DNA from: Octopus bimaculoides
Taxonomy: Eukaryota
DNA length: 64,000 nucleotides
Assembly (NCBI RefSeq): GCF_001194135.2
Contig: NC_069006.1
Coordinates: 22,097,712-22,161,711, forward strand
Direction of reading: 5' to 3'
The stretch's first letter is position 1, and each line of letters begins with the position of its first letter. The translations under genes and the position numbers were made by a program. Below the pieces are notes generated by a model, which was given only the letters and a program-made list of their open reading frames with translations, ran no database searches and was not told the DNA's origin. Positions 4,551 through 56,204 of the stretch are shown here, piece by piece.

Positions 4551-4746
4551 GGAATAATGAAAAATAATAATAAGGCAGAATGCTAAACTGGAAGCATATT
4601 TTAATAAAGATTTCTAACCGGCTTTCCTTGTATAGCAAATTTTCAAGAAGAGGGAGAATGAAAATGTTTTTTACAAAGAAGTACAAAATGAAGAAAATAA
4701 TATATAAAAAAATAAATATACCAATACATCATATTGTCTTTGAGCT
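4551..4746 (+). mobile_element. Terminal arm of an unclassified AT-rich interspersed element
   Basis: Reverse complement of 5201-5392, 35507-35716 and 42631-42707; truncated by a gap. Confidence 0.75.
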
Positions 4747-5111: not shown

Positions 5112-5392
5112 CTCTTTTTTTAAACCTAACACAACTCTCAATTGTCATGCATCCTTATTTTTCCAACCATTATATACATGGATTACCATTGAACTTTAAA
5201 AGCTCAAAGACAATATAATGTATTAGTATATTTATTTTTTTATATATTATTTTCTTCATTTTGTACTTTGTAAAAAACATTTTCATTCTCCCTCTTCTTG
5301 AAAATTTGCTATACAATGAAAGCCCGTTAGAAATCTTTATTAAAATATGCTTCCAGTTTAGCATTCTGCCTTATTATTATTTTTCATTTTCC
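5112..5392 (-). mobile_element. Same unclassified AT-rich element, terminal arm ending ...TTTTCATTTTCC then (TA)n
   Basis: High identity to 35462-35716 and 42547-42707; terminus abuts a TA microsatellite. Confidence 0.75.
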
Positions 5393-7429: not shown

Positions 7430-8544
7430 CACATATAGAGAAACAAATACATATATATATATTTGCATATATATTCACCTATACACATGTGTGCATATAT
7501 ACACACACACACATATGTATATGCACACACATACATATATATATATAAATATACACACAAACACTCATATATTTACATACGTATATATTTACAAATATGT
7601 GTGTATGTGTATTGAAATTCTAACATTTCATTATTGTATAAAGGAAATACTCTTTCCATGTTTAAAGGTTTTTTTGCGAGATTCTACCTTACATTGAAGT
7701 ATCTATCAATTAGTTAGGAACTATTGTTCCTAACTAATACATACATTAACAACAGCATCAACATCAATAACCATACTGCTTTCATTTATTTATTTAAACT
7801 GAAAATCATAATGTAAACAAACAAACGTGTGTGTACGTAAAATCATTTTATATAACACATACAAATATATATAATACACAAACTCATAGACATATACCCA
7901 AGCACATACACATACACACATGCACTCTAGAATGAGACAATTTGGCACAGCTATTTGGATGCTGATGATCTGGCATGGCTTACAGGACATTCAGCCTGTT
8001 TGGGCAATTGTATATTTTGGTACTGGAGGCAAACATATATACACGCAAGGACGAGCATGCAGACATGTACAGAGTATAAGTGAAAGAGAGAGTGAGGGAC
8101 GGAAAGGGAGACATTACACAAACCTATAAACGTAACCAGATGCTTGCATATATAGACAGAAAAAGAGGAGGGGAGGAAGGAGAGGTAGGAGGAGAAAAAG
8201 AGGGAGATAGAAGAATGAGAGAGAAGGGAGGGAAAGGGATAGAACAAATAAAATATTAAAATGAGAGAAATCTGACCTTGAGATGCCTGATGTTGAATAA
8301 GACAACATGGAATCACCAATACCAAATAGGCAGAGTCAAAATGTCTCATATACTCCACACACACACATATAAACACATATACACCATCACAATCAGTGTT
8401 GCTAACCATGATACTACTGTTTATGTTATAGACAAACGTTTTTTTAAGCATGGTATTATTCCACTTATTGTCAGACAGTAAAACTGATTAAATAACTGAA
8501 CTATGGGACTTTTGTTTACAGGTGAATGTGAACGATGTCACCAT

Positions 8545-8876
8545 CCTGATAACTACTTGACAAGGACAGGCATCAAAATTGTTTCTCAACCTCCCTACAA
8601 TCCAAGCCTTGCTCCCTGTGACTTTTTGTTGTTTCCCAAGCTGAAGGAGAACCTCAAAGGCAGTCATTTTGATGATGAAGGAGACTGTAACAAGGGTCCT
8701 GGACACATTCCCTTTGGATGACTTCCATGGGGCCTCTTACAAAGTTGCTGGGGCGCTACAACAAATACATTGAAGCCTGAGAACCCTACTTTGAAAGATA
8801 TTAGAGTTTTGTACTTCTTTGAAATTAATAATATCTTTCCTCAAAAAGTCTGGAAACTTCTGAAATGCACCTTGTA
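8545..8876 (+). mobile_element. Mariner-family DNA transposon remnant: transposase C-terminus plus right TIR and TA
   Basis: Translates IVSQPPYNPSLAPCDFLLFPKLKENLKGSHF, matching the mariner PYSPDLAP(S/C)DF motif. After frameshifts it gives RYNKYIEA*EPYFE, resembling the mariner C-terminal KCI...G.YFE. TIR-like GTCTGGAAACTTCTGAAATGCACCTTG|TA at about 8848-8876. Confidence 0.85.
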
Positions 8877-35461: not shown

Positions 35462-35716
35462 ATTTTTCCAACCATTATGTACATGGATTACCATTGAACT
35501 TCAAAAGCTCAAAGACAATATAATGTATTGGTATATTTATTTTTGTATATATCATTTTTTTTTAATATTATTTTCTTCATTTTGTACTTCTTTGTAAAAA
35601 ACATTTTCATTCTCCCTCTTCTTGAAAATTTGCTACGCAAAGAAAGCCGGTTAGAAATCTTTATTAAAATATGCTTCCAGTTTAGCATTCTGCCTAATTA
35701 TTATTTTTCATTTTCC
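35462..35716 (-). mobile_element. Unclassified AT-rich element terminal arm, between a gap and (TA)n
   Basis: Copy of 5155-5392. Confidence 0.75.
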
Positions 35717-39750: not shown

Positions 39751-41339
39751 TTGATCTCTTCTGTTGGAATGTCTGTGAGTTGAAGATCTAGAACTAAAAA
39801 TTATTGGCAAAAATGGAATGGAATACCAAAGATTTGGCATTTTGTGAGGGAAACACTGAGAATAGCAGTTAGTGTAGAGACAAGGGCCAGGGAAATGGGA
39901 GAAGGCAATAAATATGACTAGAGGAGGGAAGAGATGGTTGAATCATATAGGCTTGGATGCAGGTGGTTTGAAACTACAACATAAAAATTAATCTAAAATG
40001 AACAAACACTTAAAAGTTGAAAAAAAACAAAAAAAAAACTGTTTGAATCAAAATTAATATCATCAGATGCAAAAGTTGCTAATTGCAACAGATCTATTAA
40101 ATTAGAAAGCAATGTTAAGCGTATAAACTAATTTCCATAATTTTGATAATTAGAAAAATAAATTGAGAGAAGTATGATCACAGTTATTTAAATTATGGTC
40201 AATAGTAATGTCTTTAATTATCTGCAGTAAAATTTTTTAAAAAGTTGAAGTCCTCTTACGTATGTAGTAGCACAACCAGTTAGAAACTGTAGGTAAATCT
40301 CCCTGAAATCACACCCTATTCATCATCCTCATCATCATCATTTAATGTCCACTTTTTTTTATTTGCATGGGTCAGAGAGAATTTGTTCAAGCAGATTTTG
40401 TACAGTCAGATATATAATTCCTGCTGCCAACGCTCACCTGGTAATATTTCCCCAGTCATGTTTTACACTGAAGTCTAGAAACAAACAACTTCACTTGTAT
40501 GACAACGATGCTCATTTACAGCCATCACAGATGACAAGACAAAAGTACACACATACACATACACACATAAAAGTACACATGTATACAACAGGCTTTGTTC
40601 ATATTCTGTCTACAAAACTCACTCACAAAGCTTTGGTCAGCCCAGAGTTATAATAGAAAACACTTGCTCAAGGTACTGTGCAAAGAGATCACATGACTAG
40701 GAAGCAAACTTCTTAACCATACAGCTATGATTGTGCCTATTGCAATGTTGTACCTATTGCAATGTTGTACCTATTGACATGTTTGCACCTACTGTCTATG
40801 AAATATAAATGAAGGACACATTGAATAATGTGGTCCTCTATACATTAGGACCTATAAAAGGATGTGATGGTCATAACTTAAAAATAAAAGTTGAAGTAAT
40901 GCTCCATGGAGGCCAGTCACACTGGTAGAAATAGCAGTCAAATATCCAGCAAATCATAAATCTTCTGAATTTTGCAAACTATCTTCTGAATTTTGCAAAC
41001 CATCTTCTGCAAATTCTTTCATTCAAGCATTCTTTCCCATAAACTGAGTGTATGTTTTGAGTCGCTTTGGCTACAGAGTTTCCTGTTTTGTACTCATAAA
41101 GCAAATGCTCTTTGGATACTTCCATGTTAGAAAGGGTTTAAATCAAAGAAATTTTAATTCTATTATTCTGTAAAATAATATTTAATTAATATAAATGTAC
41201 ACAAATGCATAAAAATAATTTTTAATTCCATTAGACATTCTAAAGTATTTTAAAATTTCATTCAATTTTAAAAAAGGTAAAATCAGACAGAACTTATGGG
41301 ATGACCTGATATATATATATATATGGATATATATACTTA

Positions 41340-41670
41340 TATGTTGGGCTTCTTTCAATTTCCATTTACCAAATTCACTAACAAGGCTATAGTAGAAGAC
41401 ACTTGTCCAAGGTACCATGCAGTGAGGCTAAATCCAGAGTCATGTAGTTAGAGAAGAAAACTTCTTACCACACAGCCATGCCATCTTTATACATACACAT
41501 ATATATAAATATGAGAGAGGGTCTTCCATGCAGTTTCTATCTACCAAATTCAATGACAAGGCATTGGACAGCCTGAGGCTATAATAGAAGACACTTGCCC
41601 AAAGGTGCTGTGCAGTGGGACTGAACTCAAAAACCATGAGGCTGAAAAGCAAACTTCTTAACCGCATGAC
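41340..41670 (-). mobile_element. Two tandem CORE-like SINE heads
   Basis: GAAGACACTTGTCCAAGGTACCATGCAGTGAG... and GAAGACACTTGCCCAAAGGTGCTGTGCAGTGGGACTGAAC... Confidence 0.75.
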
Positions 41671-42319
41671 CATTACTGTATCTGTAACTTCTTAACGATA
41701 CAGCTGTCTGCTCCAGTATATTGAACAATATATATACTGTGCAGATGACTGACCCTGGCTTACTTAATCAGAAATATCTGCTAAGTAAATGCAACAGTAT
41801 GAGAACAAGTCAGTATAATAGTAGGAGTCATTAGCATGTAGATTGTGAACTTCTAGTAATATTGTAATGTTTAGCCACCATTTTATTTTTAAATTGCATC
41901 ATGTGTGTGTGTGTGTGTATTCCTATATTTTGACATGCCCTGAACCTGGAGATCATACTGTCCATTTGATACAGAACACAGAATACAGATAGAAGAGAAG
42001 ATAACAGATATTCAAATGCAGGCATAATTCTATTCAGAATTCAATACAGAAATTTGCTCTAAGAATGAATACAACCTTGAAAATATTTCTTATGAAAACA
42101 AAAAGAAAAACATAGAAAGATGTCCAAAGTATCTGCGCGAGTAGCATAAAATTGCAGAAACATACACAGAAAAATACACATATAGTTATAGACATATGTA
42201 TATGTATGATCGCATCTCTCTCTCTACATATATATAAATTCAAATGTGAATTAAAAGCAGTTTGAGGTATATAAACAAAATCAAACACACATACACAAGG
42301 TGTGCATGTTGTTAGTTAT

Positions 42320-42707
42320 AAAGACAGAATCTCCACACAAGAAAGAATCAACAAGGAGAATCTTTTCATAGAGAAATTCCAACCATTTCTTAACACACAT
42401 ACCTCTCAGTGACCTTATTTCTCTAGGAACAGACATAAACTTCCTGTTGAAAAAGAGTTCATAACTCCAACTGAAAAGATTTGTCTCCCCTTACACACAC
42501 TTCCTGTTTTGACGCCACACTTCCTGCTTAACACAAACTTTTAGCCCTTTTCTTAAACCTAACAACTCTCAATTCTCATGCATCCTTATTTTTCCAACCA
42601 TTATCTACATGGATTACCATTGAACTTTAAAAGCTCAAAGACAATATAATGTATTGGTATATTTATTTTTTTATATATTATTTTCTTCATTTTGTACTTC
42701 TTTGTAA
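42320..42707 (-). mobile_element. Longest visible piece of the unclassified AT-rich element, including probable internal sequence
   Basis: 42547-42707 matches 5112-5270. Upstream sequence with three (C)ACTTCCTG motifs is probably element interior; the left boundary is uncertain. Confidence 0.6.
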
Positions 42708-43560
42708 NNNNNNNNNNNNNNNNNNNNNNNNNNNNNNNNNNNNNNNNNNNNNNNNNNNNNNNNNNNNNNNNNNNNNNNNNNNNNNNNNNNNNNNNNNNNN
42801 NNNNNNNNNNNNNNNNNNNNNNNNNNNNNNNNNNNNNNNNNNNNNNNNNNNNNNNNNNNNNNNNNNNNNNNNNNNNNNNNNNNNNNNNNNNNNNNNNNNN
42901 NNNNNNNNNNNNNNNNNNNNNNNNNNNNNNNNNNNNNNTTATATATACACACACATATATTTATATATATACATACGCATACCATCAAATACAGCACATA
43001 TATGATGCATTTTTTATTCCAAAGAAATGTTAAAAAAAAAATACCCCAGGTTCTATATGCAAAGTTAAGCCTACTTTACATGCTTTAATGCTCAAAAAAA
43101 AATCTTATTGAATATGCACTGCTGAAATTAGGGCATGTCCTGCTTGTGCATCTTGTATGCAATCAAATACATTACATACACACACACACGTTCACTCACA
43201 GAGATAAACAAACATTATTATTGTTATTTTCATTTAACAGTTTCAGAACCTTTAAACAGATTGAGAATTTAGCTTATGGACCGAGCTGAAATTTGAAAAG
43301 ATACTAGTTGAATGGCTAAGATCAAATACACTTTATAAAAATTAAAATCAAAATATGTCAAAGCATATGATATATACATAAAGGTTCTTCTATATTCTTG
43401 CACACACACACACACAAACAATAACACAATATTATTATAGTGGGAGAGAAAAAGATTTATGAATGAAGCATGTATTTCATACCCTTTAATATAAAAAAAA
43501 CAAATTAAGTCCAAACCTTGTAAAAGCAGGCATGGAAGGCAGATGGAAAAATATCAATGT

Positions 43561-43600
43561 TTACTCACCTGAAAAAAATAAAAATAACAAGAAAATTAGA
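43561..43600 (-). promoter_or_regulatory. Candidate recursive splice site (ratchet point): branch point, poly-Y, CAG|GTGAGT
   Basis: Minus strand TATCTAATTTTCTTGTTATTTTTATTTTTTTCAG|GTGAGTAA; junction between 43569 and 43568; CTAAT about 27 nt upstream; about 93 nt AG-free. Confidence 0.55.
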
Positions 43601-44964
43601 TACATATATATGAAGAGAGAGAGAGAGAGAGAGAAGGATACATATATAGATATGATATTAATACTTCAATTTTAATCAAAACTTTATATATATCAAATGT
43701 TTACATATATGTATCTGTCTATTTATCTATACATTAATAATTAAAATTTGGCACAAAGGACAACAAAGGAGCATACGGAATAACAGGAAAAACACACACA
43801 ACAGAACACACACACTCTCATTGACCAAATATGACCACAATTTTGATGATATTTTGAATTTGGCAGAGTCCACTTGCATGCATGCATACATGATGGCCAT
43901 CCACTTGTGACTGAGGAAGACCATTGCTGACCTTTAGATTTGTGCACAAACCAAAGATCGCCAAAATGTCCAATGCCATTCCCTGCATATGTGATTTTAT
44001 ATCAGAGTGACCTTTTCTTAGAGACACGCTTTAACAGAAGCTGAGGGGTGCCTCACAAACAGTGGTCTTCTAGCACACTGGACACCGATAGCTGTTGAGC
44101 CTCCACTAGGTTCATTGCTCCAAAACACAACGCACTGCCTAGTCTTGGAATTGAAACTATGATCTTGTGATTGTGAATTTAAGATCCTAACCATTACGCC
44201 ATGCACCTTTACAACCATGTAAATAATAATATAGTTCTATATTTAAGAGATGAGGAATTATGTACATTATTTTCATTTGTTTTGGTTGACACTTGCCCAA
44301 GGTGCTGTACAGTTGGATTGAATCCAAAACCATGTCGTTAAAGCAAACTTCTTAAATGCATAACAATGTCTATCAGATGTAAACTCCTTTACAAGCATAG
44401 TCAGGGATTCAGGAATTAGTAATCATAATAATAATGTATATAATGTTCTTTATAATGTTCTGTATTCAAATTTCCATGATTGTGTGATGACTTGAACAGT
44501 GTGCGTGAGAGAGAGAGAGAAAGAGAGGTACAAACAGTTATACAGATAGATAGATGTATGTGCCTACCAAATTTCACTAACGATGTATTGGTCTATGCCA
44601 AGCTAAGTAGCTAAGTTCACCTATATTTGTGTGACATCTTTTAGGGACATAAATATCACAAAGCTCAATTTACCAATTTAAGCTAGTTATACAAGTATAT
44701 GTATAAAAACACATGCACACATCTATCTGTGTGTCTGTCTGTCCATCTCTTTCTTCTGCATTCTCTCATATAGATATGCATATATGCATACATTCACATA
44801 CATCTATCTAGCTTTTTGTCCATCTATTAGTACTCCCCATCTCCTACACACAAATATATACACAATGTGCAACCATACAGTTTCAGTCTACAAATTCCTA
44901 CTCACAAAATATTAGTGAACCAAGACTACAGAAGAAGTGCCCTATCCATAGAGACACACATAAT

Positions 44965-45310
44965 CATCATTATCATTTAACGTCCATTTTCCAATTTGAC
45001 CAGAGTTGGTAAGACCAGAGTTGGTAAGACCAGGGGTTGCACCAGGCTCCGTTGTCTGTTCTGGCATGGTTTCTATGGTTGGATGCCCTTCCTAATGCCA
45101 ACTACTCCACAGAGTATACTGAATGATTTTTATGTAGCACCAGTACTTTTAATGTGGCACCAGCACCAGCACTTTTAATGTGACATGAGTACCATTGCTT
45201 TTTAAGTGGCACCAGCGAAAGTACTTATGTGGCACCGGCACCGGTATCAATTCTACTACGGAGGACAAGTCTTCTTGAGTACAGCAGCGGACCAGACATC
45301 TTGATCCTTA
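44965..45310 (-). mobile_element. Longer diverged copy of the (GAT)n-tailed retroelement with internal degenerate GTGGCACCAG minisatellite
   Basis: CATCATTTAACGTCCATTTTCC...GGTTGGATGCCCTTCCTAATGCCAAC; internal 15-bp tandem duplication at 44998-45027. Confidence 0.65.
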
Positions 45311-45999
45311 ATGTAATCAAAATTGGAACTTTGGAACCACATGGTTGTGAAACAAACTCCTTAACCACATAGCCACGTCTGCTTCCCTTGGACCTGTTTT
45401 ATGTCAATCAGGTCAGCTGGAGCATGTAGCAGAATTATATTACTACTACTCAGGCAAAGCACACGCAATAGTTGTAGTAGTAAGGTTGGCAATCTGGTCA
45501 GTATGTGGTCCAACACCTTAACAGAAAAAAATCAATTTGAAATTGGGTGAAATAAATATAATTTTTACCCTAATAAAAAAAATATTATTACAGTCACTTC
45601 CTTTTCTTTTACTTTTTGTTTTTCTTATTTTCTTTTCTGTTTTATAGAGATCTTGTTATGCTCTGGTTTCAGTAATTGAGTCTATCTATTTCAGCTTACT
45701 TGCATTGTTAATACTCTTGAGAAAGACATCAACATTGAACAATTTTATTATCTCCACTCACCTATAAGTCTGAGGCGTCATGCCAATAATAAAAAATAAC
45801 AATAATAAAAAATAAGTAAATAGAGGGAAAAAAATCAATATTTACATTTACAATTTTCATACTTTAACTAAAAGGTCTTGTTTTCGTAGTCTATGGTTAC
45901 CCAGGTGATCACTGAACCCTTCACGTGTCCCAGATCTCCCCTACCATTCCACCACTTCTCATAGAAAACTCTCAAAAATGATATTTTGGCCATTATTAA

Positions 46000-46180
46000 T
46001 AAAATATCAATAAATGGATGAATGGTCAATGTTTCAAAGAAATGCCAAAATATCTGAAATAATAAGTTCTTTCCCATCGCTGAAAAAATATGATTAATTT
46101 ATTATTGAAAACATCTGTCTAAATGGCACCAGCATTCCTATTTTTGATGAGGCCAAAAGTCTTGGTGTTGCATTAAATAT
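46000..46180 (+). mobile_element. Ancient LINE reverse-transcriptase fragment
   Basis: MDEWSMFQRNAKISEII...NICLNGTSIPIFDEAKSLGVALNMNLK resembles the non-LTR RT thumb region (W.....lN..K; i.lnG..I......K.LGV.L). Confidence 0.4.
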
Positions 46181-46599
46181 GAACCTTAAGCAATAGATCA
46201 ATCAACTGATCAATCACTCATACACCACACTAAAACAATATTTGGATAACCAGAAAATTCCTTACTCTAGGTCAGACAAACTTGTATTTGTTATGTCTAG
46301 AATCATTTTGAAAATTGACTATTATAATTTCACTTTCAGTTAATACAATTTTCAAAAAAAACAAAAAAACACTTGCAAATATATTTTCTAAAAGTCTTTA
46401 TCACAAAGTTGCTAAGATTTCTCTTGAAATGCAAAATATATTTCCAGCAGTAGTAAGCCTACATTTAACCATCAATAAAAGACAATATAGGCATGCCTAC
46501 TTGTATACGGTATTGTATATCTACATAATGATTCTCTCATTGCTGCAATTTTGTAAGTATGGTTTTACCATACTTAAGCAGCGAAGTAGTATGCCAAGC

Positions 46600-46790
46600 A
46601 AAACTCTTAGTGGCATTTCGTCAGTCTTCACATTTAAGGTATAAATTCCACCAAGGTCGATTTTGCCTTTCATTCTTTCAGAGTCAATAATCTAAGTACC
46701 AGTTGAGAACAGGGGTTGATCTAATTGACTAAACCCCTCCTCTAAAATTGCTGGCCTTGTGCCAAAATTTGAAACCAATATTTATTCTGG
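46600..46790 (+). mobile_element. tRNA-derived SINE (second family)
   Basis: AAATTCCACCAAGGTCGATTTTGCCTTTCATTCTTTCAGAGTCAATAA..AAGTACCAGTTG. Confidence 0.75.
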
Positions 46791-46859
46791 TTCTTTACTT
46801 TCTGGGTTCAAATCTCATTGTGGCTTATGCAGTTGATAAAGTGAAATTTTTCTTCTATA

Positions 46860-47110
46860 CACAATTCTGTCCCAAATAAGGCTTGGTGCCACTGTAGTGT
46901 AAGGGACTACAGAGAAGGAAAAGAACGGATCTACAAACGCAAAAGATGCTGACTGACAGAAAAACTTAAGGACTGAATATCATAGACCACATGAAAACAA
47001 GATGATGGTAGTAAGTTCCAAAGAGCAGCAGTTTGAGGAAAGAAGCAATAAGAATAAAATGACTTATGACTAACAGCAATGGTTAAAAAGATTGCTGAGA
47101 GAGTTTAAAG
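46860..47110 (-). mobile_element. CR1/L2-like LINE 3' end
   Basis: Minus strand encodes approximately SYCFFPQTAALWNL.PSSCF.VVYDIQS, matching the FFP.T..LWN.LP motif, followed by a short 3' UTR. Confidence 0.55.
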
Positions 47111-47717
47111 AGATTGAAACATACCTGTAGTTTGGAAACTCATTAGAGATTTTTTATGTGTTGTTATTTAGCCCCGAGTCAGGTCTAAATAAGCAGACCA
47201 ATGATAGAAAAGTATTCCAGCCGTAACCATGCTGTCTCCACACTATTCATAATATACCAAGTGAGTCAACAGTGACTTCTAATGGTGATATTTATTTTTT
47301 ATGAAGCCTCACATAATATTGAATGCATGTGACCAGGGACCACATGTGAACTTGTATTGCCATTGAAACTCCAAACATGAACTCGTTGGTCAGAGCCAGC
47401 TCAACCCACCCCTGATAAATGTCACTGCTAGTATGAGTAAGTAGTACATTACATTGCAATGCGAATGATCTAGCTTGAACTACATTATTTCAATTTCAGG
47501 AAATTTGCAAAAGACGTTTCTTTGTATTTCTTGGATTGTTTTCAATTTCAATCAATTGAAGTTGAGATAGAATCTGGTAAAAAAAAATATTGTTGATATA
47601 TAAAACAATGCCACTTTCTAGGCTTTATTGTAATACAATTGTAATGTATTACTGGAATATAGTGCAATTTCAATAAAATTAAAAATGTGAAAAACTATCC
47701 ATTAACACAATACATAG

Positions 47718-48030
47718 AGGATGTGGCTGTGTGCTAAGAAGCTTGCTTCCCAGTCACATAGTTTCAGGTTCAGTCCCACTGCATGGTATCATGAGCAAGT
47801 GGCTTCTACTGTTGCCTCAGATTGACCAAAGCCTAGTGGGTAGATTTGGTAGACAGAAACTGAAAAGAGGCCCATCATATTTGTGTATATGTGTGTGTGT
47901 GTGTGTGTGCGTGTCTCTCTCTCCTTTTGTGTCTGTGTTTGTCTCCCACCACCGCTTGACAACTGCATTGCCATAATTTAGCAGTTCAGCAAAAGAGACT
48001 GATAGAATAAGTACCAGTAAAGACTGAATC
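47718..48030 (+). mobile_element. Composite CORE-like SINE, well preserved
   Basis: GTGGCTGTGTGCTAAGAAGCTTGCTTCCCAG..GGTTCAGTCCCACTGCATGG...GGTAGACAGAAACTGAAA, (TG)n, CACCACCGCTTGACAAC...GCAAAAGAGACTGATAGAATAAGTACCAG. Confidence 0.8.
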
Positions 48031-55421: not shown

Positions 55422-56204
55422 CATCATCATCATCATCACTACCACCAAAACTATTTTATCAACTTAACAAATAAAATTGAATTTTTATTGCATTTCTAGA
55501 AATAAATTGTAAAAGTATTTATGTATGGCATTTATAAATGTAATTTCACTAAAACAATAAAACCATGATAAAATGCTGAATTTGCATGTATTTATACCTC
55601 TATATACATTTTTAAANNNNNNNNNNGAATTTTTTTTTATTTTAAATTTAATATTATATTAAAAAATGGCAAGTTTCTATCTGGTCAATTTAATAACTTA
55701 TATCATGGTTTGTATGACTCTGCCAGCCGCTAAACTAGAGTCAATGAACTAAAGCATTCAAATTTCATGTAATTCATTGTTAGACTGGCTAGAAATAGCA
55801 GCCAAATCCCTCTCATATCACACAATACTGTCTTTAAAAAAGAAAGGACACATTAAATAATGTAGTCATAGAAGTACAAAAGGACAAGTCAGTTGTGACT
55901 GGATTGCATTTGATCAGAAATCTATCTGATTAAAGCTGAAATGAAGGCTCAACAACAGCTTTTGAAAAGGGCCAATAAAGGAAATTCTATATGGTTACAT
56001 GGCTTGCTAGAAATAGCAGACACATTTCCATTAAATTAAATGCTTAAGAAAGATGAAGGACATAGATACAGAAGTTTGAAATAATGGATTAGTCACAACT
56101 TAAATTGCATCTATGGTATTATTATACCAATTAGAAACAGCAGCCAAATCTCCTTTGCATGACATATGACTATTTTAAAAAGGACTTATTAGATAATATA
56201 GTCA

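What the first reader, a model, noticed from the sequence alone, without database searches (positions are those of the whole stretch)
43517..43600. Textbook recursive-splicing (ratchet) site AG|GTGAGT on the minus strand with a 52-nt cryptic poison exon
Seen: the minus strand reads TATCTAATTTTCTTGTTATTTTTATTTTTTTCAG|GTGAGTAA. This is a CTAAT branch point, a long U-rich tract and CAG, immediately followed by a consensus 5' splice site, with about 93 nt free of AG upstream. It lies in unique sequence, not in a SINE. The sequence after the AG has stops in all three frames within 15 nt (TGA, TAA, TGA), so it cannot be an internal coding exon. A possible second donor AAG|GTTTGG at 43517/43516 would define a 52-nt exon. 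Known: long introns in Drosophila and in vertebrate neuronal genes are removed stepwise at such AG|GT sites, which are defined through short cryptic, often stop-containing RS exons. Inference: this is a cephalopod recursive splice site in a giant intron. I am not aware of recursive splicing being characterised in molluscs, but I cannot check that.
Basis: partly seen in the sequence, partly recalled or inferred. Interest (0 to 1): 0.72.

Follow-up and report, generated by a model that had tools for sequence, protein, structure and literature searches.

The report
Used splice acceptor followed by GTGAGT
The predicted splice site is really used: RNA contigs join a distant upstream exon exactly onto it. 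What accumulates looks like a long non-coding alternative exon, and stepwise (recursive) intron removal is not shown.

Summary
The sequence is as described. On the minus strand there is a CTAAT branch point, 17 of 20 pyrimidines, a 93-nt AG-free zone and CAG|GTGAGTAA, with AG at 43570-43569. It is the only such site in the window, where about 0.01-0.08 are expected by chance.

Assembled contigs of four public runs (two samples) cover 42943-43570 without a break. They then leave the genome exactly at the AG, continuing into a GC-rich 28-nt tag that is absent from the window. So an exon more than 20 kb upstream (or hidden in a 10-N gap) is spliced onto 43568.

Those RNAs keep the GTGAGT and at least 626 nt of AT-rich sequence. 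Coverage is a block of 12-19x. It is about 0 just upstream and 3x or less within about 1.4 kb downstream, so it looks like an exon and not a saw-tooth. No contig uses the 43517/43516 donor, so the 52-nt exon is unsupported.

Best reading: an alternative, probably terminal, ORF-truncating exon (about 0.5). A true recursive site remains possible (about 0.3). The library type of the four runs, poly(A) ends, lariats and the host gene could not be determined.

The parts
43595..43599 (-). Candidate branch point CTAAT (branch A at 43596, 27 nt from the AG)
   Evidence: Read from the sequence. Function is inferred from the consensus only.
43571..43594 (-). Polypyrimidine tract (17 of the last 20 nt are C/T), inside a 93-nt AG-free zone
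   Evidence: No substitution is listed here in the orthologous contigs of two related species.
43569..43570 (-). 3' splice site AG, shown to be used
   Evidence: Contigs of X12, X13 and X14 match the window up to 43570 and then continue into non-window sequence (28, 12 and 28 nt). The X15 contig aligns only to 43561, with 36 nt left unaligned. On the plus strand the break has no GT/GC donor, so only the minus-strand reading is canonical.
43561..43568 (-). GTGAGTAA, a consensus 5' splice site motif (CAG|GTGAGT in the genome, AAG|GTGAGT after ligation to the upstream exon). Its use as a donor is not shown.
   Evidence: The motif sits inside the assembled RNA contigs, unspliced. It is kept in species B and C, where a 1-nt deletion at 43560 shortens AAA to AA without touching GTGAGTAA.
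42943..43568 (-). Observed transcribed block contiguous with the upstream exon: at least 626 nt, 29% GC, stops in all frames. Its lower end is undefined because it runs into a microsatellite and then the assembly gap.
   Evidence: X12 contig of 656 nt at depth 19.3; X13 641 nt at 12.6; X14 503 nt at 12; X15 500 nt at 6.5; depth is 0 at 43572-43612 in X12 and X13. GC content and uniqueness.
43511..43516 (-). GTTTGG, the proposed donor of the 52-nt exon. It matches 6 of 9 positions of MAG|GTRAGT and is not supported.
   Evidence: The contigs pass through it without a break or a loose end, and only one contig per run was laid on 43425-43612.
43013..43018 (-). AATAAA inside the block. It is not the main 3' end, because sample S11 contigs continue 70 nt past it.
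42708..42938 (.). Assembly gap (231 N) that hides the downstream end of the block. It is flanked at 42560-42707 by a repeat that abuts three other gaps.

Best explanation
The CAG at 43570-43569 (minus strand) is a genuine, used 3' splice site deep in an intron of a minus-strand gene. A GC-rich, probably coding, upstream exon ending ...TATTACCGGGATGCTGGGAACGGATGGAAG lies outside the window, more than 20 kb away, and is ligated to 43568. The RNA that accumulates then reads on through GTGAGTAA and at least 626 nt of AT-rich sequence. Whatever the reading frame, translation would stop 0-4 codons after the junction (...GWK-VSKH*, ...DGR*, ...MEGE*). I read this as an alternative long exon that truncates the ORF, most probably an alternative 3'-terminal (intronic polyadenylation) exon whose end is hidden in the assembly gap. 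Shown: the use of the acceptor, the strand, the continuity of at least 626 nt, the block-like coverage, and that the upstream exon has at least one other continuation. Inferred: that the exon is terminal and polyadenylated, and that the upstream exon is coding. The GTGAGT at the start of the exon is a latent consensus donor whose use is untested.
For:: contigs of X12, X13 and X14 align without mismatch from 42943/43094 to 43570 and then continue into non-window sequence; the 28-nt and 12-nt tags read for X12 and X13 agree. The X15 contig aligns to 43561 with 36 nt unaligned. The four runs come from two samples; the tag is not in the window. The contigs stop 28 nt past 43570, and 2 further nt fit both sides, which makes 30 = k-1 (31-nt minimal contigs). 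This means an assembly-graph branch inside the upstream exon, so the junction is one of at least two fates of that exon. Coverage is exon-like. The block is at 12-19x. At 43572-43612 depth is 0. No piece of 45 nt or more lies in the next ~0.65 kb upstream in any of the four runs, and upstream pieces are otherwise only repeat fragments or a 3.2x contig. Depth is mostly 0 at 45250-47880. Beyond the gap, unique contigs reach only 2.7-2.9x at 41950-42164. Base rate in PMC8797253: of 84 junction-supported intronic AGGT candidates in mouse, 46 were unannotated exons and 19 were recursive sites.
Against: No poly(A) tail or 3' end was seen; the block runs into a microsatellite and a gap. The library type of X12-X15 is not on record, so the coverage shape could be distorted, for example by 3'-biased priming. 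Three deep RNA-seq runs (6% sampled) show zero reads on the block, and 15 other RNA runs of the species hold 0.00-0.01 of the words. It is therefore not a common mature mRNA feature. Contigs show presence, not absence, so minor spliced forms could be missed.
Confidence: 0.5

Rival explanations
1. It is a true recursive (ratchet) splice site. The upstream exon is first spliced to 43568, regenerating AAG|GTGAGT, which then serves as donor to remove the rest of the intron. On this reading the contigs are first-step intermediates.
For: The juxtaposed 3'/5' motif is a perfect match, with a branch point, a 93-nt AG-free zone and 17/20 pyrimidines. The site is more than 20 kb from the upstream exon. 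The exact first-step junction was observed in two samples. The downstream sequence is non-coding. The block is absent from 18 other RNA runs, as expected if mature mRNA lacks it. The motif is unchanged in two related species against about 5% background divergence. The regenerated donor matches MAG|GTRAGT at 9 of 9 positions, so it should be recognised whenever transcription reaches a downstream acceptor (inference).
Against: There is no saw-tooth. Coverage falls from 12-19x to 3x or less within about 1.4 kb, whereas a long downstream intron segment should stay near peak level. No lariat, second-step or RS-exon junction evidence exists. The conservation test is underpowered: about 2.5 changes are expected in 52 nt, P(0) is about 0.08, and species B and C share nearly all their differences. 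In mouse most such candidates are exons. The host gene and its downstream exon are unknown.
Confidence: 0.3
2. It is a long internal cryptic or poison exon. The acceptor at 43569 is paired with a donor further downstream, for example the GTGAGT at 43199 or one hidden in the gap, and the contigs are partly processed RNA.
For: The acceptor is used. A second GTGAGT lies at 43199. Stops in all frames would make any inclusion NMD-prone.
Against: Contigs run through 43516 and 43199 without branching, and no downstream junction was seen. An exon of 370 nt or more is long for exon definition.
Confidence: 0.1
3. It is an artefact. The break at 43570 would then be a DNA structural variant, a chimeric contig or contamination in study P5, not splicing.
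For: The kind of X12-X15 is listed as '?', and the tag was found nowhere else.
Against: The break falls within 0-2 nt of a site predicted beforehand from sequence alone; for a random breakpoint in a 628-nt contig that has a chance of about 0.5%. It recurs in two samples. The tag ends in AAG and is 53% GC, like an exon end. DNA contigs of other individuals are colinear through the site (X4 contig 42973-43633).
Confidence: 0.05

Closest known systems
Recursive splice sites: Drosophila ratchet points and vertebrate RS sites in long neuronal-gene introns (PMC8605326, PMC8797253, PMC6110456)
   Same: A juxtaposed strong 3' splice site and consensus 5' splice site (YnCAG|GTGAGT). The location is deep in a long intron. 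A junction joins the upstream exon to the GT. The downstream sequence is full of stops.
   Different: There is no saw-tooth profile, no lariat or second-step evidence, and no enrichment test between nuclear and poly(A) RNA. The spliced-but-unprocessed RNA accumulates as a discrete block of at least 626 nt.
[quoted passage not shown]
   Same: An AGGT site with upstream junction support and an exon-like rather than saw-tooth profile. In mouse this is the commonest outcome for such candidates (46 of 84).
   Different: RS-like cryptic exons are defined by having down-junction reads as well; none is seen here. This block is also much longer than typical cryptic exons.
Annotated RS-exons whose regenerated 5' splice site is repressed by the exon junction complex (PMC6224609)
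   Same: An exon that begins with a functional-looking GT donor and is nevertheless retained in the RNA.
   Different: Those are mostly constitutive coding exons with a used downstream donor. Here the exon is non-coding and rare, and it has no observed donor.
Alternative last exons and intronic polyadenylation isoforms (general knowledge)
   Same: An acceptor inside a long intron opens a long AT-rich exon that truncates the ORF. Coverage is block-like, and the upstream exon has alternative fates.
   Different: The poly(A) site and tail were not observed (assembly gap). A consensus U1 site at the very start of the exon is unusual for this class.

Membership tests
Recursive splice site (ratchet point / RS site) | Juxtaposed polypyrimidine-AG and GTRAGT (AG|GT) on the transcribed strand | tested here: met
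   CAG|GTGAGTAA with 17/20 pyrimidines, a 93-nt AG-free zone and CTAAT 27 nt upstream; 0.01-0.08 expected per window.
Recursive splice site (ratchet point / RS site) | Lies inside a long intron of an expressed gene on the same strand | tested here: inconclusive
   The upstream exon tag is absent from the 20.4 kb upstream, so that intron segment is longer than 20 kb unless the exon is hidden in the 10-N gap at 55617-55626. The host gene and its downstream exon were not identified.
Recursive splice site (ratchet point / RS site) | Junction reads joining the upstream exon directly to the GT of the site (first-step intermediate) | tested here: met
   The evidence is assembled contigs from four runs of two samples, not raw reads.
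Recursive splice site (ratchet point / RS site) | Saw-tooth intronic coverage in total or nascent RNA, with a step at the site | tested here: not met
   There is a step at the site (0 upstream, 12-19x downstream). However, coverage is back to 3x or less within about 1.4 kb. Caveat: the library type is unknown and a gap plus a repeat intervene.
Recursive splice site (ratchet point / RS site) | Second step: the regenerated 5' splice site is used (lariats with a 5' end at the site) and the site's sequence is absent from mature mRNA | not testable with these tools
   No raw reads of the expressing libraries were available and all read-laying runs were used. The three raw RNA runs have zero coverage here.
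Recursive splice site (ratchet point / RS site) | Junction reads enriched in nuclear or total RNA over poly(A) RNA | tested here: inconclusive
   The junction is present in X12-X15 only. It is absent from X24-X26 and from 15 other RNA runs. Library types and host-gene expression are unknown.
Recursive splice site (ratchet point / RS site) | Motif conserved above the flanking intron | tested here: inconclusive
   No substitution is listed at 43535-43630 in species B and C, against 17 listed at 43240-43534. P(0 changes in 52 nt) is about 0.08, some differences were not displayed, and the two species are not independent.
RS exon / 52-nt poison exon | A downstream 5' splice site at 43517/43516 is used or competes | tested here: not met
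   Contigs pass 43516 unbroken and no loose end lies there. The donor GTTTGG matches only 6 of 9 consensus positions. Rare forms could be missed in contigs.
Alternative 3'-terminal exon (intronic polyadenylation) | A used internal 3' splice site, with the upstream exon having alternative fates | tested here: met
   The contigs end k-1 = 30 nt into the upstream exon in both samples, which indicates a branch there.
Alternative 3'-terminal exon (intronic polyadenylation) | Poly(A) signal with cleavage and a poly(A) tail at the end of the block | not testable with these tools
   The block runs into a microsatellite and the gap at 42708-42938. The AATAAA at 43018 is read through.

The most novel reading that the evidence does not exclude
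This is a bona fide recursive splice site in a giant intron of a (presumed) cephalopod. That would be the first site with first-step junction evidence outside insects and vertebrates. It may also double as a switch between recursive removal of the intron and premature termination in the sequence just downstream.
Probability: 0.3. Interest if true: 0.6.

Novelty: new member of a known kind. Interest (0 to 1): 0.4.

Why it matters
A splice site predicted from raw sequence alone proved to be used, and it joins an exon more than 20 kb away. If it is an alternative terminal exon, it marks an unannotated isoform encoding a truncated protein. That is useful for annotation but ordinary. If it is recursive, it would extend stepwise intron removal to molluscs, whose genes have very long introns. 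The searched library holds no paper that treats recursive splicing in octopus, molluscs or cephalopods: two searches found nothing, and the third found one paper that mentions each term once in passing. Either way it gives a concrete, cheaply testable locus.

Tried and rejected
1. Chance motif without function: rejected because of the junction contigs.
2. SINE or repeat origin: rejected.
3. Plus-strand transcript: rejected because no GT/GC donor exists at the break.
4. Raw RNA reads of X24-X26: no coverage of the block, only microsatellite pile-ups.
5. Locating the upstream exon: the 28-nt tag is absent from the window with up to 3 mismatches and from metagenome contigs. It is too short for protein searches.
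6. Finding host-gene exons from ORFs or stop-free stretches: only low-complexity and transposon-like translations.
7. Rfam scan of the whole window: no match.
8. Classifying the X12-X15 libraries by description words: their metadata are not on record.
No wide view of the 20 kb on either side was therefore possible.
10. Constitutive last exon: disfavoured, because the contigs stop exactly k-1 nt into the upstream exon in both samples, which implies a branch.

Full report
THE OBSERVATION

The minus strand reads tatctaattttcttgttatttttatttttttcAG|GTGAGTAAacattga. AG is at 43570-43569 and GT at 43568-43567. CTAAT is at 43599-43595, with the branch A 27 nt from the AG. The second AAG|GTTTGG lies at 43517/43516, 52 nt downstream. 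Stops occur in all three frames within 15 nt.

One search gives 17 of 20 pyrimidines and a 93-nt AG-free zone. The window holds six AGGTRAGT sites on both strands, and this is the only one with a real polypyrimidine tract. Markov simulations expect 0.077 such sites per window with at least 15/20 pyrimidines, and 0.01 with at least 17/20. The sequence is single-copy. On motif alone a Gb-scale genome would still hold many such sites by chance (inference).

RNA EVIDENCE

Four runs (X12-X15; two samples; one 2022 study; kind not on record) hold 35-42% of the sampled words of 43000-44200, although each is only 0.2-0.4 Gb of contigs.

Laid on the window, their contigs cover 42943-43570 (X12 at 19.3x, X13 at 12.6x) or 43094-43570 (X14 at 12x) without mismatch. 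They then continue into sequence that does not fit the window. The X15 contig (6.5x) aligns from 43096 only to 43561, with 36 nt left unaligned. On a microsatellite-free stretch the overhang reads, on the minus strand, TATTACCGGGATGCTGGGAACGGATGGA followed by AG|GTGAGTAAAC.

The break is at the predicted acceptor, with a 2-nt AG ambiguity. The overhang is 53% GC against 29% for the block, and it ends in AAG like an exon end. Read on the plus strand, the break has no GT or GC donor. DNA contigs of another individual pass through the site colinearly.

This is an exon-exon type junction on the minus strand. The tag is not in the window. The upstream exon is therefore more than 20.4 kb away, or hidden in the 10-N gap at 55617-55626.

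The contigs stop 28 nt past 43570; with the 2 ambiguous nt that makes 30 = k-1, since 31-nt minimal contigs are visible. This happens in both samples and indicates a graph branch. The upstream exon therefore has at least one other continuation.

WHAT THE RNA LOOKS LIKE

The contigs keep GTGAGT unspliced and run on for at least 626 nt, through the proposed 43517/43516 donor and a second GTGAGT at 43199. They run through the AATAAA at 43018 as well, and end in a microsatellite at the edge of the assembly gap 42708-42938.

- Immediately upstream, depth is 0 at 43572-43612.
- No piece of 45 nt or more lies in the next ~0.65 kb upstream in any of the four runs. Further upstream pieces are only repeat fragments or a 3.2x contig.
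- At 45250-47880 depth is almost entirely 0 at 98% likeness, apart from one isolated block.
- Beyond the gap and a repeat, unique sequence carries only 2.7-2.9x contigs at 41950-42164 and 0-6x at 41662-42017.

The elevated coverage is thus a discrete block of 0.63 to about 1.4 kb. That is exon-like and not a long saw-tooth.

Three deep RNA-seq runs (6% sampled) have no read on the block. Fifteen other RNA runs of the species hold none of it.

CONSERVATION

Orthologous DNA contigs of two related species span 43200-43630 at about 5% divergence. Seventeen substitutions are listed at 43240-43534. None is listed at 43535-43630. A 1-nt deletion at 43560 leaves GTGAGTAA intact. The motif is retained, but the test is weak. 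About 2.5 changes are expected in 52 nt, so P(0) is about 0.08. The two species share nearly all their differences, and some differences were not displayed.

INTERPRETATION

Shown:
- The acceptor is functional and lies on the minus strand.
- Its partner exon is far upstream.
- The junction is an alternative fate of that exon.
- The accumulating RNA includes at least 626 nt of non-coding sequence. In any frame this ends the ORF 0-4 codons after the junction.

Most likely (about 0.5) this is an alternative long exon, probably an alternative 3'-terminal exon whose poly(A) site is hidden in the gap. In mouse, 46 of 84 junction-supported intronic AGGT candidates were unannotated exons and 19 were recursive sites with saw-tooth (PMC8797253).

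A recursive site remains a live rival (about 0.3). The motif is perfect. The regenerated donor AAG|GTGAGT matches the consensus at 9 of 9 positions. The first-step junction is exactly what an intermediate would show. The block is missing from ordinary RNA-seq runs. If the X12-X15 libraries are 3'-biased, the block-shaped coverage would not argue against recursion.

The 52-nt poison exon has no support. A DNA variant or chimera is unlikely (about 0.05), given the exact coincidence with a pre-specified site in two samples.

KNOWN SYSTEMS AND NOVELTY

The site works like, and may be, a ratchet point. It passes the motif and first-step-junction criteria and fails the saw-tooth criterion. The second-step, lariat and nuclear-enrichment criteria could not be tested.

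It equally fits an unannotated or RS-like exon at an AGGT site, an exon beginning with a repressed donor (PMC6224609), or an intronic polyadenylation exon.

Two literature searches (recursive splicing with octopus, and with mollusc) found no paper. The search with cephalopod found one paper, which mentions each term only once. A confirmed case would therefore be a new member of a known kind in a new phylum. The organism itself could not be verified, because run labels are coded.

LIMITS

- The evidence comes from assembled contigs, which show presence but not absence.
- Library types are unknown.
- Of the 8 counted read-laying runs, two were lost to filters.
- The host gene was not identified.

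Noticed in passing
window 45670-46035: An isolated 366-nt block is covered at 17.4x (X12) and 9.7x (X13) in sample S11, but at 0 (X14) and 2.2x (X15) in sample S12. It has no loose ends and zero coverage on both sides. On the minus strand a 60% A tract (45590-45669) lies immediately downstream. The block may therefore reflect internal oligo(dT) priming on a minus-strand intronic RNA, or it may be a small independent transcript.
   Followed up: partly
window 42560-42707, 5131-5268, 35462-35597, 4671-4746: A repeat of about 140 nt (86-99% identical copies) abuts four assembly gaps. Three copies touch the gap edge directly and one (5131-5268) starts 20 nt from it. The gaps probably hide the interior of one repeat family, including the gap that cuts off the downstream end of the transcribed block.
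   Followed up: partly
window 40985-41134 (minus strand): A stop-free 50-codon stretch matches the HTH_48 domain of Mos1/mariner transposase (Pfam PF17906, E = 4e-15). It is a mariner fragment about 2.5 kb downstream of the site. A mariner-like C-terminal motif at 8500-8718 (+) gave no Pfam hit.
   Followed up: partly
window 41306-41661, 44176-44278, 45000-45102: These short segments have contig word depths of 20,000 to 80,000 in X12-X15 and very high depth in DNA runs. They are high-copy SINE-like repeats that are also abundantly represented in those libraries.
   Followed up: no
window 45761, 62027, 36150, 30821 (minus strand) and 60821 (plus strand): Five other AG|GTRAGT sites exist. All lack a polypyrimidine tract (7-12 of 20) and have short AG-free zones (6-35 nt). 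X12, X13 and X15 contigs run through the one at 45761 unbroken.
   Followed up: partly
window 43094-43570 in sample S12 (X14, X15): Contigs of sample S12 carry two 1-nt gaps relative to the window and end at the T9 run near 43094. This suggests indel polymorphism in homopolymer runs between individuals.
   Followed up: no
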